Shown here in pieces: positions 3,574-8,061 of a DNA stretch of 64,000 bases. Under the pieces are notes generated by a model. It was not told the DNA's origin and ran no database searches. It saw only the letters and a list, made by a program, of their open reading frames with translations. Each line of letters starts with the position of its first letter. The stretch's first letter is position 1. Location of the stretch: positions 1 to 64,000 of IMG/VR virus record IMGVR_UViG_3300045051_000720; one strand, written 5' to 3'. A program made the translations under genes and the position numbers.

Positions 3574-4439
3574 TGTGATTGCCTTAGTTTCCACTCCGAC
3601 AGCGACACAGGCCGCGGCTCGTTCGGTTCGCCCGGCCAAACTCCGCTCTCGTAGCAACGCGCCAGCAACTGCAAATCAGCCATCACCTCGCGCGTGCCGA
3701 CGTTCAACGACTCCGCATCCGGCAACCGAATGGAGCACTCGAAAGGCTCCTGCTTCTCCACCACGAGATTCACGCACTGCGGCACGAAAGTTTCCACGCC
3801 GAGCACGCGCGCAACGACAAGCCGGTAAAAAGCGTCGCTCTTGTAGTAGTTAAATTTCTCGTACTGGTGATCGAAATCGTCTAGGCATTCGATTGTCTTG
3901 ACGTTCATCAGCAGCGGGCCGGCGGTCGCCTTCGGATCGAACCAATCGACGCGCGCCTGTACGGCGAAACCAGGAAGCTGGTGGCGAAACGTAACCTCGG
4001 GTGTGCCGCAGTTCAGCAACTCGGCGGCAGCCGGTTTCTCCCGCACGGCGTCAACCATGCGCTCGGCGAGATCGACTGATTCGCGGGCGATGATTTCGCG
4101 GGAGCCGCGCTCCTTTTCAAAACCATCCCACCACGAAATTGAATCACAGGTTTTCTGTGACGGTTTGGCGGCACAACGGAATCGCCGCAAGTCCTCCGGC
4201 GCATCATCGGGAATCACGACGTACCGCTCCGCGAATACCTTCGGCCCCTCCAGCGCAAGGCAGTGGAAGGCGCGGCCAAATTGCAGCGCCTCCGTGTCTT
4301 TGGGTGGCGGCATAGTCCGCTGAATCCACCGCTTGAAGAAAATCAGCGGACGCGGGCGCAAGTCGTCGAGTTGGCCGGCGCGAACGGCATCGCTTGCGAG
4401 GTAGTCCGCGAAACTTTCGTTCAGGATTCCTGTGCTCAT
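3570..4439 (-). CDS. RecE/exonuclease VIII-like PD-(D/E)XK protein (DUF3799-like)
   Basis: ALQFGRAFHCLALE, PEVTF, ARVDW, NVKT, Y..SDAFY motifs; directly downstream of RecT-like gene. Confidence 0.8.
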   Translation of the reverse strand: MSTGILNESFADYLASDAVRAGQLDDLRPRPLIFFKRWIQRTMPPPKDTEALQFGRAFHCLALEGPKVFAERYVVIPDDAPEDLRRFRCAAKPSQKTCDSISWWDGFEKERGSREIIARESVDLAERMVDAVREKPAAAELLNCGTPEVTFRHQLPGFAVQARVDWFDPKATAGPLLMNVKTIECLDDFDHQYEKFNYYKSDAFYRLVVARVLGVETFVPQCVNLVVEKQEPFECSIRLPDAESLNVGTREVMADLQLLARCYESGVWPGEPNEPRPVSLSEWKLRQSQ

Positions 4440-5140
4440 GGTGCGGCGGTAGTCGCGGGTTTTTCCAAGTCGCTAAGACTCGGCGTGACGTTCTTCTCCG
4501 GCTCGGGATGGTCGCGCAGCTCTTCGATGGTCTTCAAGCCGCGCAGCAAATCTGGGAAAGCGTCCCGCAGGCAGAATGTGCGCGCCCGCATCAGCAACAT
4601 CCGGTCAGGATATTGGGACCACGGACCGGTTTTACCCCACAATCCAGCCCTCTTGGCCATCGCGACGGTGAACGATCGCACGATGGGTTCGGCGCGCTCC
4701 TTACGCTTGACGGTCACACGGAATCCCATCTCGTCGCCAGTCCCGATCATCTCGTCCTTGTATGAGTCGATGAGAGACTGACAAACCCCTGGAACAGCGT
4801 CACCCCAAAGCGCGGGGCGACCGTTGATAAGAGCGATGTTTTGGAGCGATGCCATCGGCCCAAGCCCCACCTCGGCGCCGAATTGAATAGCGACCAGCAC
4901 GGCCTCCGGCGTACCGAACCCCTTCGGCGCCATGCCAGAGGTAATGACCGCCTTCGCGAAAATAAAGGCGTCCGCCATGCTGCGCAGCGACACGCCGCGT
5001 TCGTCGTAGGGGATGAGTTCGCTGCGCTTTGGACCGCCGGCGATCGGCACGATCGGCGCGGGTGATGGCGTCGGTTGCTGGCCTGTGGACTCAGCCTGCG
5101 TAGCCAGCTCCAGCGTTTCGGATTCGGGATGTTTTGTCAT
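4436..5140 (-). CDS. recT: RecT/Bet-family single-strand annealing protein
   Basis: GAEVGLGPMASLQNIALINGRPALWGDA and GPWSQYPDRMLLMRARTFCLRDAFPDLLRG motifs. Confidence 0.85.
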   Translation of the reverse strand: MTKHPESETLELATQAESTGQQPTPSPAPIVPIAGGPKRSELIPYDERGVSLRSMADAFIFAKAVITSGMAPKGFGTPEAVLVAIQFGAEVGLGPMASLQNIALINGRPALWGDAVPGVCQSLIDSYKDEMIGTGDEMGFRVTVKRKERAEPIVRSFTVAMAKRAGLWGKTGPWSQYPDRMLLMRARTFCLRDAFPDLLRGLKTIEELRDHPEPEKNVTPSLSDLEKPATTAAP

Positions 5141-6082: not shown

Positions 6083-6267
6083 TATTCGTCTTGCTTTGGC
6101 CATTCACCGGGCAATTCTTCGTCCGGTTGACTTACAGGCGGCGTCTCGGGGTTGTTACCGGGCGCCGCCTTCGTTTTTACGGTGTTCGTCAGAAGAAACT
6201 CGGCTCGCACGGCCTCATGCTGTTCCTCGTTGAATCGGTACGGTTTCCCTGACGGGTCGGTGGTCAT
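6082..6267 (-). CDS. hypothetical protein
   Basis: ATGA overlap with methyltransferase stop (MTTDPSG...). Confidence 0.5.
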   Translation of the reverse strand: MTTDPSGKPYRFNEEQHEAVRAEFLLTNTVKTKAAPGNNPETPPVSQPDEELPGEWPKQDE

Positions 6268-7214
6268 GGCGTGACAGGCCGATAGGTGGCGCCGATCCAT
6301 CGCGCGAGGACCAGCGGAATCTTGGCAATCGTGGCACTTGCGGCCTTGCGCGCCTTGCTCTTGCTGGCGGTGTGTTGCGCCACACCCCATCCGCTACATG
6401 CGCCGCGATAGGCAGCCCCGGCTTTCACCCCTTCGTGCTCGCCCGGATTCGTCAGGTGCTTGGTGTGGCCTTCACCGTCTCGGATGTGCGGCGCGCCGTC
6501 CGTCTTCCTCCCTTTCAAATTTCGTTCTGCGTGGCCGTTGAATGCGAGTCCGGCAACATGCTTTGGGTGGCCGGGTGGATACCAGCCCGCGCCCATCGTC
6601 GTCACCTTCACGCCTTCCACGCCTTCTCTGAATTGGTCGGGACGAATCGCGCTGAGTTGATTACCCGTTCCCGGTTTCGGCGCCTTGGTGCGAGATGCCG
6701 TGATGGGCATCAGCGCCGGCACGTCCCCCCAAAGATAAAATGAGCCGAAGTTCCACTTGGCCCTACCGACCCACGGCTGAGCCCCGCGCACGTTTTCGAC
6801 CACCATCGGAATGTGATGCCCCGCCGCCTCGCACGCCTCGCGCTGAATCCGAAAGCAGGCGTTGAAGAGCTGGTTCAGCTTGTCCAGCTTTTCGCCCGTC
6901 ATGTCGGCGCGAATTGCTGCGGCCTTCGCTTTACCCTTTTTCCACGGCATCGCCATGTAGCTGTACGCTTGGCACGGAGGGCTACAAACTATCAGACCAG
7001 CATCCCTGAATTGGCTTCCGTGCAATGTGAGCACGTCTTGGATTATCAACTCAACATGCGCCGGCCGCGCGACGTTGAATTGTGCGCACATATCCTCGAT
7101 GTCGAAACCCTTAACGCGCCAACCTTCCGCGACCAGCCCTTCAGCCCAGCCATGAAGGCCCGTGAACAGGTCAATCGCGAGCGGCCTTTCCCCAGATGAG
7201 ATTGAAGGCGTCAA
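6264..7214 (-). CDS. C5 DNA cytosine methyltransferase (compact phage type), TTG start inside upstream endonuclease gene
   Basis: motif I AIDLFTGLHGW, motif IV SPPCQ, motif VI ENV, motif X-like ATIAKIP. Confidence 0.8.
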   Translation of the reverse strand: MTPSISSGERPLAIDLFTGLHGWAEGLVAEGWRVKGFDIEDMCAQFNVARPAHVELIIQDVLTLHGSQFRDAGLIVCSPPCQAYSYMAMPWKKGKAKAAAIRADMTGEKLDKLNQLFNACFRIQREACEAAGHHIPMVVENVRGAQPWVGRAKWNFGSFYLWGDVPALMPITASRTKAPKPGTGNQLSAIRPDQFREGVEGVKVTTMGAGWYPPGHPKHVAGLAFNGHAERNLKGRKTDGAPHIRDGEGHTKHLTNPGEHEGVKAGAAYRGACSGWGVAQHTASKSKARKAASATIAKIPLVLARWIGATYRPVTP

Positions 7215-7833
7215 GAAATCGCTCCATTTCCGTTTCTCGATAGACGAGAAGTTTTGAACGATGCGGGAAGAGGCGAGGTGAACGATTTGTCACCGCCGAT
7301 GCAGGAATGACGTACAACGGCCCAACGAGCCCGGCGCAATGCACGATAAAGAAATCCACATCGCCGGGGTCGTAACCGGAGCGCACGCCGTTTCGTCGAT
7401 GTCGGTCGAAATTCACTCGGAAGCATTTCGTGCTGAGATCGTAAGTGCCCGATTTTACCTGCAAACGCTTTACGCCGTTTCTGCCAAGCACGATCAAATC
7501 CGTCCTGTGGTTTTGGCATGCTGGTTCCCAGACATCGAAACCCAGCTCGGACAATCTGGTCTTGGCGTAGTTTTCCGAGATAGTTCCTTTCACGGTTGAA
7601 TCGAGTTCGTCCCATTGAGCTTTGAACCGAACGAGGTCGGTATCCTCGATTGACGCCGTTGGAGCGGGGCGTTGCGGCTTCTCTCGGCTGAGCCGCATAG
7701 CCGAAACGATTTTGCTGATCGTTGTGAAGGACCATCCCGTTTGCAATCGGATCGCCTTGAATGTTGCACCTTGGCGATAGAGTTCTGCGACGACCGTTGC
7801 TTGTTGGGCCGTTGGGGATTTCTTTTTTGCCAT
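7171..7833 (-). mobile_element. free-standing PD-(D/E)XK homing endonuclease (I-Ssp6803I-like) with N-terminal HTH
   Basis: KGTISE...TDLIV...RLQVKS...GYDPGDVDFFIV...LYVIP; own promoter; sits between two copies of MTase motif I. Confidence 0.75.
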
Positions 7834-7840
7834 GAAGTGT

Positions 7841-7869
7841 GTTATATCTTAGCACCTGCGTTGTGCCAA
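7841..7869 (-). promoter_or_regulatory. sigma70-type promoter TTGGCA-17-TATAAC for the endonuclease
   Basis: exact 17-nt spacing, 7 nt upstream of ATG 7833. Confidence 0.6.
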
Positions 7870-7885
7870 GATGATTTACGCACGC

Positions 7886-7921
7886 CCCTCCGCAGAAAAG
7901 GTCTATCGCGATCGGTTTCAT
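7886..7921 (-). pseudogene. orphaned 5' end of a C5-MTase (MKPIAIDLFCGG)
   Basis: ATG-initiated motif I copy; frame continues as non-MTase sequence through the endonuclease. Confidence 0.65.
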
Positions 7922-8061
7922 GTCGGCGGCTTTCACTGCCGACACCATACCAAAGCCCAGCGCCGCCGCCTATGGAAAACCAAAACGGCGTTTGTAATCG
8001 GATTCGGACCGTCAGACCCGCTCGTGTTATCCGAAGTACGGATACACGGTGAAGCTCGTTG

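What the first reader, a model, noticed from the sequence alone, without database searches (positions are those of the whole stretch)
6264..7921. Homing endonuclease inserted at motif I of a methyltransferase, with a diverged target duplication that rebuilds the gene
Seen: an orphan start ATG AAA CCG ATC GCG ATA GAC CTT TTC TGC GGA (MKPIAIDLFCG, 7921-7889) is followed by a TTGGCA-17-TATAAC promoter and a PD-(D/E)XK endonuclease, whose TGA stop falls inside a second copy CCG CTC GCG ATT GAC CTG TTC ACG GGC (PLAIDLFTG, 7184-7158). The copies match at 18 of the first 21 nt and differ mostly at wobble positions. The intact MTase has no ATG of its own and can only start at TTG 7214 inside the endonuclease gene. 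There is no room for a ribozyme core. Inference: intron-less homing into a conserved motif-I site, where the element supplies a recoded, cleavage-resistant N-terminus and puts the MTase under its own promoter, giving a nuclease-MTase pair resembling a nascent restriction-modification unit.
Basis: partly seen in the sequence, partly recalled or inferred. Interest (0 to 1): 0.6.

Follow-up and report, generated by a model that had tools for sequence, protein, structure and literature searches.

The report
Homing endonuclease replaces methyltransferase gene start
A selfish nuclease gene in a giant phage sits in a DNA-methylase gene together with its own replacement front end for that gene, leaving the old front end as a 12-codon stump; the same scar recurs in a dozen unrelated phage fragments, which suggests these nucleases carry gene pieces between viruses.

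Summary
On the minus strand lie an orphan methylase start (7921-7886), a promoter-like spacer, an intact I-Ssp6803I-family PD-(D/E)XK endonuclease (7833-7171) and a complete C5-methyltransferase (7214-6264). TTG 7214 is the methyltransferase's only usable start. There is no intron or intein.

The arrangement recurs. All 14 distinct endonuclease loci with upstream sequence have nuclease overlapping methylase, across three methylase families. Eleven have a clear 5' stub; 12 endonuclease-free loci have none.

The reading needs correcting:
- Stubs vary from 8 to 66 codons, so motif I is not a fixed insertion site.
- Stubs resemble ordinary family members more than the neighbouring full gene, so they are remnants of a displaced allele, not a target duplication.
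- Every linked methylase is altered at the Ala codon just before the catalytic SPPCQ (98% Ala elsewhere).
- The longest stub breaks in that codon, and the window's methylase switches parentage within ten codons of it.

Best reading: intronless homing into motif IV. The mobile unit is promoter, endonuclease and a roughly 75-codon cleavage-resistant methylase 5' module. This is a phage mirror image of fungal mitochondrial mORF elements. Cleavage itself is untested.

The parts
7886..7921 (-). Orphan 5' stub of a displaced C5-methyltransferase allele (MKPIAIDLFCGG), with its own ATG at 7921
   Evidence: Read directly. Family HMM hit on profile positions 5-20. 11 of 11 residues identical to the N-termini of P0003 and P0097, and closer to those than to the neighbouring full gene. 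Analogous stubs found in 10 other loci.
7834..7885 (-). Left end of the mobile unit: spacer with promoter-like TTGGCA (7869-7864), 17 nt, TATAAC (7846-7841), ending 7 nt before the nuclease ATG with no Shine-Dalgarno (leaderless-like)
   Evidence: DNA shared with L002 and L068 starts about 42-44 nt before the ATG. A TTGNNN-17-TATA(A/C)N block 6-9 nt before the ATG recurs in L002, L003, L004, L007, L009, L015 and L018. The strict scanner does not call it. Function is inferred.
7171..7833 (-). Intact free-standing PD-(D/E)XK homing-type endonuclease gene (220 aa) with an N-terminal helix-turn-helix-like region
   Evidence: PF11645, E 6e-13. PADLOC 'HEase' model, E 4.5e-7. PDB 2OST (I-Ssp6803I), E 0.0015, with the D...QVK region aligned. 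All invariant residues of the 23-member alignment are present. Single copy in the 219-kb genome.
7222..7225 (-). GGAG ribosome-binding site for the methyltransferase, inside the nuclease coding sequence
   Evidence: Read: 7 nt upstream of TTG 7214. Function is inferred.
6264..7214 (-). Complete C5-cytosine methyltransferase (316 aa from TTG 7214), overlapping the nuclease 3' end by 44 nt in another frame
   Evidence: Full-length matches to more than 8000 relatives. Motifs I (DLFTGLHGW), IV (SPPCQ) and VI (ENV) are present. L002 has the same TTG, and L003 has an ATG one codon later. The public gene call (P0001, 230 aa) starts at ATG 6956 and omits motifs I and IV.
6984..7187 (-). Cassette-derived 5' module of the methyltransferase (residues 1-68, T-type motif I through Cys-68, which is family column 75)
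   Evidence: 95-100% identical to L068 and 70-95% to L002, but only 17-70% to P0002, P0003 and P0094 over residues 21-50.
6969..6995 (-). Motif IV region carrying the inferred cleavage-resistant variant (CTG ATA GTT TGT AGC CCT CCG TGC CAA). The crossover interval is 6983-6957.
   Evidence: Endonuclease-free alleles share an invariant AT.GTCGC here. All 10 linked alleles are changed at the Ala codon, plus nearby synonymous sites. Column 75 is Ala in 98% of unlinked members and non-Ala in 9 of 9 linked ones. The L009 stub breaks in this codon.
6264..6956 (-). Resident-type body of the methyltransferase (from residue 78 on)
   Evidence: 95-100% identical to P0002, P0003 and P0094 in the conserved parts, against 33-90% to L002 and L003, which also carry a deletion here. 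P0003's contig has no endonuclease.

Best explanation
This is an intronless homing cassette that targets phage C5-methyltransferase genes.

The mobile unit has three parts: a short promoter-bearing spacer, an I-Ssp6803I-family PD-(D/E)XK endonuclease gene, and the first ~75 codons (motifs I to IV) of a methyltransferase. That 5' module carries an altered, presumably uncleavable, version of the DNA encoding '...IVA-SPPCQ'.

Inferred mechanism:
1. The nuclease cuts the conserved motif-IV DNA of endonuclease-free methylase genes in co-infecting phages.
2. The break is repaired from a cassette-bearing genome.
3. On the right, repair uses homology starting at motif IV, so the new gene is a hybrid of cassette 5' module and resident body.
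4. On the left there is no homology beyond the gene. The resident 5' end is therefore joined to the cassette's left end illegitimately or through a pre-existing stub, after variable loss. This leaves an 8-66-codon stub.
5. Nuclease and hybrid methylase are then expressed as an overlapping two-gene unit from the cassette's promoter. The methylase is translated from an internal start (TTG 7214, GGAG 7 nt upstream).

Shown: the architecture, its recurrence, the allele relationships, the column-75 signature and the mosaic.
Inferred: cleavage at motif IV, immunity of the variant, the repair route and promoter activity.
For: 1. Nuclease identity: PF11645, PADLOC HEase, PDB 2OST.
2. Sporadic distribution: 22 nuclease clusters against more than 8000 methylase hits.
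3. All 14 distinct nuclease loci with upstream sequence, at 34-89% nuclease identity and across three C5-methylase families, have the nuclease overlapping or abutting a complete methylase.
4. Eleven of the 14 have a clear 5' stub. HMM E-values are 2e-39 (L009), 4e-9 (L006), 1e-9 (L011), 9e-8 (L015), 3e-5 (L007) and 5e-3 (L014). L012 and L013 stubs were read. None of 12 endonuclease-free loci has a stub.
5. Stubs match ordinary members better than their own full copy: L009 89-91% against 78%, L015 83% against 56%.
6. Column 75 is the only highly conserved column among the first 150 where all 9 linked methylases deviate, with C, M or F. Fisher p = 3.6e-12, not corrected for phylogeny. Within the T-type flavour, the unlinked members carry Ala almost without exception and all 4 linked ones carry Cys.
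7. At the DNA level, every linked allele is changed at the Ala codon, with clustered synonymous changes nearby. The L009 stub ends in that codon.
8. Prediction test: non-Ala P0110 proved to be nuclease-linked. Ala-type P0004, P0003 and 11 viral loci are nuclease-free.
9. The window's methylase is a mosaic with its crossover in the ten codons after column 75.
10. Nuclease and methylase 5' parts co-diverge (Spearman 0.69).
11. The 5' module flavour is uncoupled from the gene body family-wide.
12. There is no intron RNA, and the frames differ, so it is not an intein.
Against: - No cleavage or homing data exist, so the target site is inferred from comparative patterns only.
- The column-75 statistic is not phylogenetically corrected. 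The linked alleles fall in a few clades, although they use three different residues and are scattered on the tree.
- The general mosaic test has low power. The whole family shows weak 5'/3' correlation (median rho 0.11), and linked members are only marginally lower (p 0.03-0.05).
- L068 shares the window's right-hand junction but has a different stub. The window's stub and body therefore need not come from one event. The stub's 'PIAIDLF' occurs in 9 of 119 members, so the match to P0003 has about an 8% chance expectation.
- In clade A the cassette's left edge is constant (about -42) while stubs differ. Simple resection plus end-joining does not obviously predict this.
- L018 has no clear stub, and L002 has only an internal fragment.
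- P0097 has Cys-75 without this nuclease, although an HNH gene lies next to it.
- No syntenic empty site in a close relative of this phage could be found.
Confidence: 0.68

Rival explanations
1. The endonuclease homed precisely into the motif-I coding sequence, carrying only a short recoded N-terminus. The two motif-I copies are a diverged target-site duplication, and motif I is the cleavage site.
For: In the window, L003 and L007 the stubs end close together, just after motif I. The copies share 18 of 21 nt. The element does supply the N-terminus and a promoter-like sequence.
Against: Other stubs end at about codon 8, 24, 38, 41, 46 and 66. Stubs are closer to other alleles than to the adjacent copy. 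Cassette-type sequence continues to residue 68 and switches at motif IV. Clade-B linked methylases keep a canonical motif I (CGLGGW, or CGVGGW in L018), while all deviate at column 75. T-type motif I is common without the nuclease.
Confidence: 0.1
2. The nuclease is a passive passenger. A stable nuclease-methylase operon is moved between phages by ordinary illegitimate or modular recombination (for example RecT-mediated), and the stubs and the column-75 change are by-products unrelated to nuclease cleavage.
For: The whole methylase family shows 5'/3' module shuffling even among unlinked members. A RecT-like gene lies 1.1 kb away. No cleavage data exist.
Against: This does not explain why stubs occur only at nuclease-bearing loci (11 of 14 against 0 of 12). 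It does not explain why all stub ends lie 5' of motif IV, or why the one conserved codon altered in all linked alleles is where the longest stub breaks and the window's mosaic switches. The protein family is a characterised homing endonuclease family.
Confidence: 0.12
3. The pair is a restriction-modification-like unit. The PD-(D/E)XK enzyme restricts unmethylated DNA and the adjacent methylase protects the phage genome.
For: Co-oriented, overlapping nuclease and C5-methylase genes, conserved as a pair at 34-89% nuclease identity. The fold is PD-(D/E)XK, and an N-terminal HTH could act like a controller protein (weak Trp-repressor-like hit).
Against: The nuclease matches the homing-endonuclease model and no restriction-enzyme model. 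Its only solved relative is I-Ssp6803I. The methylase family is more than 99% solitary. Restriction-modification logic does not explain methylase 5' stubs, the column-75 signature or the mosaic.
Confidence: 0.06
4. An intron, an intein or translational bypass joins the orphan start to the downstream gene.
For: I-Ssp6803I itself is intron-encoded (PMC3384342). An orphan start lies upstream of an interrupted-looking gene.
Against: No Rfam match at E up to 10. Only 52 nt lie before the nuclease ORF and none after it. The downstream copy is complete with its own start, so nothing needs joining. The stub and the full gene are in different frames (731 nt apart). Stub lengths vary between loci.
Confidence: 0.02

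Closest known systems
Fungal mitochondrial mobile ORF (mORF) elements: Allomyces macrogynus atp6; Glomus atp6, atp9, cox2, nad3 (PMC3630166)
   Same: A free-standing endonuclease ORF travels with a foreign copy of one end of the host gene. This creates an expressed hybrid gene and leaves the native gene end as a nearby remnant. The remnant resembles close relatives more than it resembles the inserted copy.
   Different: There the replaced end is the C-terminus, the nucleases are LAGLIDADG or GIY-YIG, and the hosts are mitochondrial genomes. Here the replaced end is the 5' ~75 codons, the nuclease is PD-(D/E)XK, and the hosts are phages. The hybrid gene start overlaps the nuclease gene, and the remnants are trimmed to variable lengths.
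Intronless homing by free-standing phage endonucleases (T4 SegB, MobE and relatives; PMC2330249, PMC2790892, PMC2988022)
   Same: The nuclease gene lies beside, not inside, a resistant allele of its target gene. It cleaves the sensitive allele in a co-infecting phage, and the nuclease gene and flanking markers are co-converted.
   Different: Those move between closely related genomes using homology on both sides and leave no gene stub. They belong to the GIY-YIG or HNH families. Here the contexts are unrelated, and the left junction lies inside the target gene.
I-Ssp6803I (PDB 2OST; PMC3384342)
   Same: Same Pfam family (PF11645), with the catalytic D...QxK region aligned. It is the only solved relative.
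   Different: I-Ssp6803I is about 150 aa, encoded in a cyanobacterial tRNA-fMet group I intron, and its close homologues are described as mainly cyanobacterial. The window's protein is 220 aa with an extra N-terminal HTH-like region, is free-standing, is phage-borne and is tied to C5-methylase genes. Identity is low (E 0.0015).
ShiLan-type out-of-frame HNH insertion in actinophage DNA methylase genes (PMC11855218)
   Same: A homing-type endonuclease associated with a phage DNA methylase gene, with overlapping reading frames, that is neither an intron nor an intein.
   Different: ShiLan is an in-frame-readable insertion retained inside the methylase protein, with a hidden HNH in another frame. 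There is no replacement module and no stub. [quoted passage not shown]

Membership tests
PF11645 PDDEXK_5 / I-Ssp6803I-type endonuclease | Profile match above the curated threshold | tested here: met
   49.4 bits against a cutoff of 26.1, E 6.4e-13, residues 81-182. PADLOC HEase, E 4.5e-7.
PF11645 PDDEXK_5 / I-Ssp6803I-type endonuclease | Conserved PD-(D/E)XK-type catalytic core alignable to the solved structure | tested here: met
   2OST aligns over residues 80-180, with T-D-L and Q-V-K matched. D112, Q125 and K127 are invariant in 23 relatives.
PF11645 PDDEXK_5 / I-Ssp6803I-type endonuclease | Site-specific cleavage of a long target | not testable with these tools
   Needs the purified protein and substrate DNA.
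Homing endonuclease gene (functional class) | Sporadic presence: alleles of the same host gene exist with and without the nuclease gene | tested here: met
   22 nuclease clusters against more than 8000 methylases. Nuclease-free alleles: P0003, P0004 and 11 viral loci.
Homing endonuclease gene (functional class) | The nuclease-bearing allele differs from empty alleles at the target site | tested here: inconclusive
   A sharp signature exists at column 75 (9 of 9 against 2 of 116), but it is not shown that this is the target.
Homing endonuclease gene (functional class) | Nuclease-dependent unidirectional conversion of empty alleles | not testable with these tools
   Needs co-infection or plasmid-to-phage assays.
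mORF-type gene-end replacement element | Endonuclease ORF, plus a foreign copy of a gene end forming a hybrid gene, plus a native remnant | tested here: met
   Stub, nuclease and mosaic methylase in the window. The arrangement recurs in other loci. It is at the 5' end rather than the 3' end.
mORF-type gene-end replacement element | The native remnant is closer to related genomes' genes than to the inserted copy | tested here: met
   L009 stub 89-91% against 78%. L015 83% against 56%. Window stub 11 of 11 to P0003.
Group I intron | Ribozyme core detectable and room for it | tested here: not met
   No Rfam match at E up to 10. There are 52 nt before the ORF and 0 nt after it.
Intein | In-frame insertion with splicing blocks | tested here: not met
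   The stub and the downstream copy are 731 nt apart, so they are out of frame. The nuclease has its own start and stop, and there are no intein families in Pfam.
Type II restriction-modification system | The nuclease belongs to a restriction endonuclease family, paired with a methylase of the same specificity | tested here: not met
   The only PADLOC hit is the HEase model, and there is no NCBIfam hit. Matching specificity cannot be tested.
C5-cytosine DNA methyltransferase (PF00145) | Profile match and catalytic motifs I, IV (PCQ) and VI (ENV) | tested here: inconclusive
   All three motifs are present, and most relatives carry PF00145. The window protein itself scores 20.5 bits, just under the 22-bit cutoff. 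Motif I is the T-type variant FTGLHGW.

The most novel reading that the evidence does not exclude
This endonuclease lineage is a general engine of gene-module exchange in phage C5-methyltransferases. The stub acts as a portable left homology arm and the gene body as the right arm, so the cassette can home into any genome that carries the methylase, whatever its flanks. Repeated invasion and loss would then explain why the 5' module (columns 11-52, T-type or C-type) is completely uncoupled from the gene body across thousands of phage methylases. A further possibility is that methylation by the linked enzyme modulates cleavage.
Probability: 0.3. Interest if true: 0.75.

Novelty: new variant of a known kind. 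Interest (0 to 1): 0.62.

Why it matters
It would extend the PD-(D/E)XK homing endonuclease family, so far known from one cyanobacterial intron enzyme, to free-standing phage elements specialised on C5-methyltransferase genes. It would also give phages a counterpart of the mitochondrial mORF mechanism, in which a nuclease spreads by carrying a resistant piece of its own target gene.

The comparative data yield a concrete, cheap experiment. One predicted target is the DNA encoding IVA-SPPCQ, and one predicted immunity change is the Ala codon.

Practically, it explains a mis-annotation. The public gene call for this methylase starts at ATG 6956 and lacks the catalytic cysteine. It also shows that short orphan gene starts next to nuclease genes can be read as scars that record the recipient allele.

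The family-wide uncoupling of the methylase 5' module from its body suggests that such elements may shape the evolution of a very large phage gene family.

Tried and rejected
- Intron or other RNA: Rfam at E up to 10 found nothing.
- Strict sigma-70 and terminator scan: no promoter was called at the claimed site, and the only terminator-like site lies inside an ORF. I considered a sigma-54 reading of TTGGCAC...TGC and dropped it, because the GG-to-GC spacing is 14 rather than 12 and L003 lacks it.
- Nuclease relatives in viral contigs and genome contigs: none found. GenBank phages hold only distant partial PDDEXK_5 matches in T7-like phages.
- Syntenic empty site in a close relative of the jumbo phage: homologs of the flanking RecT-like gene are below 50% identity and sit in small phages, so this was not informative.
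- DNA of the P0003 empty allele: not held. P0124 and P0136 contigs also came without DNA.
I did not attempt it another way, and read laying was not used.
- Generic mosaic test across all linked loci: low power, because the whole family is weakly structured. My first windowed comparison was biased by comparator choice, and I do not rely on it.
- Own-genome search for an intact target-like site: none within 3 mismatches, but absence is expected by chance.
- An own-genome search for a leftover 3' part of the displaced allele found none.
- The large representative protein search, structure prediction and complex prediction were not needed and were not run.
Full report
WHAT IS THERE

The window is the first 64 kb of a 219-kb viral (IMG/VR) record estimated 96% complete, a jumbo phage. 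On the minus strand I read the following:
- An orphan start, MKPIAIDLFCGG (7921-7886), follows a 140-nt intergenic gap.
- A 52-nt spacer holds TTGGCA (7869-7864), 17 nt and TATAAC (7846-7841).
- A 220-aa ORF runs from 7833 to 7171.
- A 316-aa ORF runs from TTG 7214 to 6264. Its codons for PLAIDLFTG (7184-7158) enclose the first ORF's TGA.

The two motif-I stretches share 18 of their first 21 nt. TTG 7214 is the only ATG/GTG/TTG in frame upstream of motif I, and GGAG lies 7 nt before it. The one caveat is that the strict sigma-70 scanner does not accept TATAAC.

IDENTITIES

The 220-aa protein is PF11645 PDDEXK_5 (E 6e-13, above threshold). It hits PADLOC's homing-endonuclease model and no restriction-enzyme model. 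Its only solved relative is 2OST, the I-Ssp6803I structure, with the D...QVK catalytic stretch aligned (PMC3384342 for the enzyme's properties). It is a single copy in the genome and keeps every invariant residue of its 23-member alignment.

The 316-aa protein belongs to a very large family of small phage C5-methyltransferases, with more than 8000 hits at E below 1e-3. It has motifs I, IV (SPPCQ) and VI (ENV). Its own Pfam score is just under threshold (20.5 against 22 bits).

The public gene call for this protein (P0001) starts at ATG 6956 and lacks motifs I and IV. Rfam finds no RNA family in the region. The stub and the full gene are out of frame (731 nt apart), which excludes an intein.

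THE ARRANGEMENT RECURS

The nuclease has only 22 relatives in the 5.8-billion-protein collection. I obtained DNA for 14 distinct nuclease loci with upstream sequence:
- the window;
- L068, L002, L003, L004/L005, L006, L007, L009/L010, L011, L015 and L018, which belong to the same methylase family;
- L012 and L013, which belong to a classical Dcm-type family;
- L014, which belongs to a third family.

In every one, the nuclease gene is directly followed by a complete methylase gene on the same strand. The two genes overlap or touch at stop and start. L002 has the same TTG as the window, L003 has an ATG one codon later, and L004 has an ATGA overlap.

In 11 of the 14 loci, a 5' fragment of a methylase gene of the matching family lies immediately upstream of the nuclease's spacer, beginning at its start codon. 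A family HMM scores these stubs at 2e-39 (L009), 4e-9 (L006), 1e-9 (L011), 9e-8 (L015), 3e-5 (L007), 5e-3 (L014), 0.1 (window) and 0.85 (L003), against 2221 ORF pieces. The L004, L012 and L013 stubs are plain on reading.

L068 has a possible 8-codon stub, L002 has only an internal fragment, and L018 has none that is clear. Twelve endonuclease-free loci of the same family carry no stub. The window's stub is therefore not a chance motif. It is one instance of a recurrent scar.

(a) Stub length is not fixed. Stubs end after about codon 8 (L004), 10-13 (L003), 12-15 (window, L007), 20 (L012), 24 (L011), 38 (L006), 41 (L014), 46 (L013), about 45 (L002, L015) and 66 (L009). Motif I is therefore not a defined insertion point.

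(b) The stub is not a copy of the neighbouring gene. The 66-aa L009 stub is 89-91% identical to ordinary family members but only 78% to its own full copy, which ranks 70th. The L015 stub is 83% against 56%. The window's stub is 11 of 11 to P0003 and P0097. The long stubs are undecayed. The pair thus represents two alleles brought together, not a duplication that diverged.

(c) I searched column by column for conserved positions at which nuclease-linked methylases depart from the family. Exactly one turned up in the first 150 columns: column 75, the Ala immediately before SPPCQ. It is Ala in 98% of 116 unlinked members and Cys, Met or Phe in all 9 linked ones. Fisher p is 3.6e-12, uncorrected for relatedness. 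Columns 71-73 and 81-82 are also disturbed.

At the DNA level, endonuclease-free alleles share an invariant AT.GTCGC here. All ten linked alleles are changed in the Ala codon, mostly with extra synonymous changes beside it. The L009 stub breaks inside that very codon.

I used this as a prediction. Among the few other non-Ala members, P0110 proved to be nuclease-linked. P0097 lacks this nuclease but has an HNH endonuclease gene immediately downstream. The Ala-type relatives P0004, P0003 and eleven viral loci are nuclease-free.

(d) The window's methylase is a mosaic. Residues 1-68 (T-type motif I through Cys-68) are 95-100% identical to L068 and 70-95% to L002, but only 17-70% to P0002, P0003 and P0094. 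From residue 78 on, it is 95-100% identical to those three proteins, while L002 and L003 diverge and carry a deletion. The crossover lies within the shared SPPCQAYSY stretch (6983-6957).

P0002, P0003 and P0094 begin with the same ...PIAIDLFCG... as the orphan stub, and P0003's contig has no nuclease. This fits a stub and body that derive from one resident allele. However, that N-terminal variant occurs in 9 of 119 members, and L068 shares the right junction with a different stub. This link is therefore suggestive, not proven.

MECHANISM PROPOSED

The mobile unit is spacer/promoter, nuclease and methylase codons 1 to about 75, with a variant motif-IV flank.

I infer that the nuclease cuts the conserved motif-IV DNA of empty alleles, which is typical of homing enzymes that choose the most constrained part of a gene. 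Repair from a cassette donor uses homology to the right of the cut, producing the hybrid gene. To the left there is no homology beyond the gene in an unrelated phage. The resident 5' end, shortened to a variable degree, therefore ends up joined to the cassette's left edge.

L009, with a stub reaching exactly to the putative cut, would be the untrimmed state. Once a stub exists, it can serve as a left homology arm for later, fully homologous homing into any methylase-bearing genome. The window phage itself encodes a RecT-like annealing protein 1.1 kb away.

The spacer carries a TTGNNN-17-TATA(A/C)N block that ends 6-9 nt before the nuclease ATG, with no Shine-Dalgarno. It is conserved in position in eight loci. 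This suggests a leaderless transcript that also serves the methylase through the internal GGAG/TTG.

Nuclease and methylase 5' parts co-diverge (Spearman 0.69), as expected if they travel together. On a tree of the methylase, the linked alleles are scattered among Ala-type relatives, needing 6 parsimony changes. That is expected if bodies are resident and only the 5' part is imported.

CAVEATS

- Nothing here shows cleavage.
- The column-75 statistic is not phylogeny-corrected.
- A fair control for mosaicism showed that the whole family has almost no correlation between 5' and 3' similarity (median rho 0.11). Linked members are only marginally more mosaic (p 0.03-0.05), and my earlier windowed comparison was biased by how I chose comparators.
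- In clade A the cassette's left edge is constant (about -42) while stubs differ. In clade B it varies: -44 in L009, -65 in L004, and -280 with an extra 71-aa ORF in L015. Whether stubs are shortened at insertion or afterwards is open.

A FAMILY-WIDE OBSERVATION

The two N-terminal flavours are C-type (FCGLGGW...ERH.YG..RYP) and T-type (FTGLHGW...EDMCAQF...). They differ only in columns 11-52. Beyond column 59, T-T, C-C and T-C pairs are equally similar, at 74.0, 75.1 and 74.3%. The 5' module is thus in linkage equilibrium with the gene body across the family. This is what recurrent 5'-end replacement would produce, although ordinary recombination could also do it.

COMPARISON WITH WHAT IS KNOWN

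The closest described mechanism is the fungal mitochondrial mORF. There, an endonuclease ORF arrives with a foreign C-terminal gene portion, forms an expressed hybrid, and leaves the native C-terminus as a remnant that resembles close relatives (Allomyces atp6; Glomus atp6, atp9, cox2, nad3; PMC3630166). The present case mirrors it at the 5' end, in phages, with a different nuclease fold.

It also fits the logic of intronless homing by free-standing T4 nucleases (PMC2330249, PMC2790892, PMC2988022). Those move between near-identical genomes and leave no stub.

A different nuclease-in-methylase arrangement, an out-of-frame HNH in the ShiLan insertion, has been described in actinophages. Its authors note no strong known association of such nucleases with methylases (PMC11855218). 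I-Ssp6803I relatives are described as mainly cyanobacterial and intron-borne (PMC3384342).

My four literature searches found no description of this element. That is limited evidence of novelty.

VERDICT

It is wrong on the site (motif IV, not motif I), on the size of the imported piece (about 75 codons), on the nature of the repeat (two alleles, not a duplication), and on the restriction-modification analogy. I rate it a new variant of a known kind, interest about 0.6.

Noticed in passing
L016:1318-1881 (contig of P0097): A 187-aa HNH endonuclease gene lies immediately downstream of a methylase of the same family. That methylase carries the rare Cys at column 75 (LIVCSPPC) but has no PDDEXK_5 gene. 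It may be a second, unrelated nuclease exploiting the same site.
   Followed up: partly
window 6264-6956 vs 6264-7214 (minus strand): The public gene call for the methylase (P0001, 230 aa) starts at ATG 6956 and omits motif I and the catalytic SPPCQ. The full protein needs the TTG at 7214.
   Followed up: yes
window 7211-7948 (minus strand): A 245-aa open frame continues from the stub's frame right through the nuclease gene in another frame. It has no family match and is probably not a gene, but translation from the stub's ATG would run into it.
   Followed up: partly
window 7849-7869 (minus strand): The promoter-like region contains an imperfect inverted repeat, TTGGCAC, 7 nt, GTGCTAA, also present in L002 and L068. 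It could be an operator for the nuclease's N-terminal HTH-like region.
   Followed up: no
window 4436-5140 (minus strand): A RecT-like single-strand annealing protein (phrog_561, E 3e-34) lies 1.1 kb downstream of the methylase. It is relevant to recombination on short homologies such as the stub.
   Followed up: partly
L014:2962-4144: In a third methylase family, a 41-codon stub is fused in frame to a nuclease core that has lost its N-terminal HTH region. This is probably a degenerating copy. An N6/N4 methylase, ParA and an integrase lie nearby.
   Followed up: partly
L015:115-467: A decayed stub is followed by an extra 71-aa ORF of unknown function before the nuclease, so the imported left flank is about 280 nt here rather than about 45 nt.
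   Followed up: partly
methylase family alignment, columns 11-52 vs 59-150: The T-type and C-type N-terminal modules are completely uncoupled from the rest of the gene across 116 family members (T-T, C-C and T-C identities are equal beyond column 59).
   Followed up: partly
P0124 contigs (no DNA held): A 198-aa nuclease lacking its first ~22 residues is followed by a gene of only 166 aa where the methylase should be. This may be another decaying copy, sitting beside NinB, YbcO and terminase genes.
   Followed up: no
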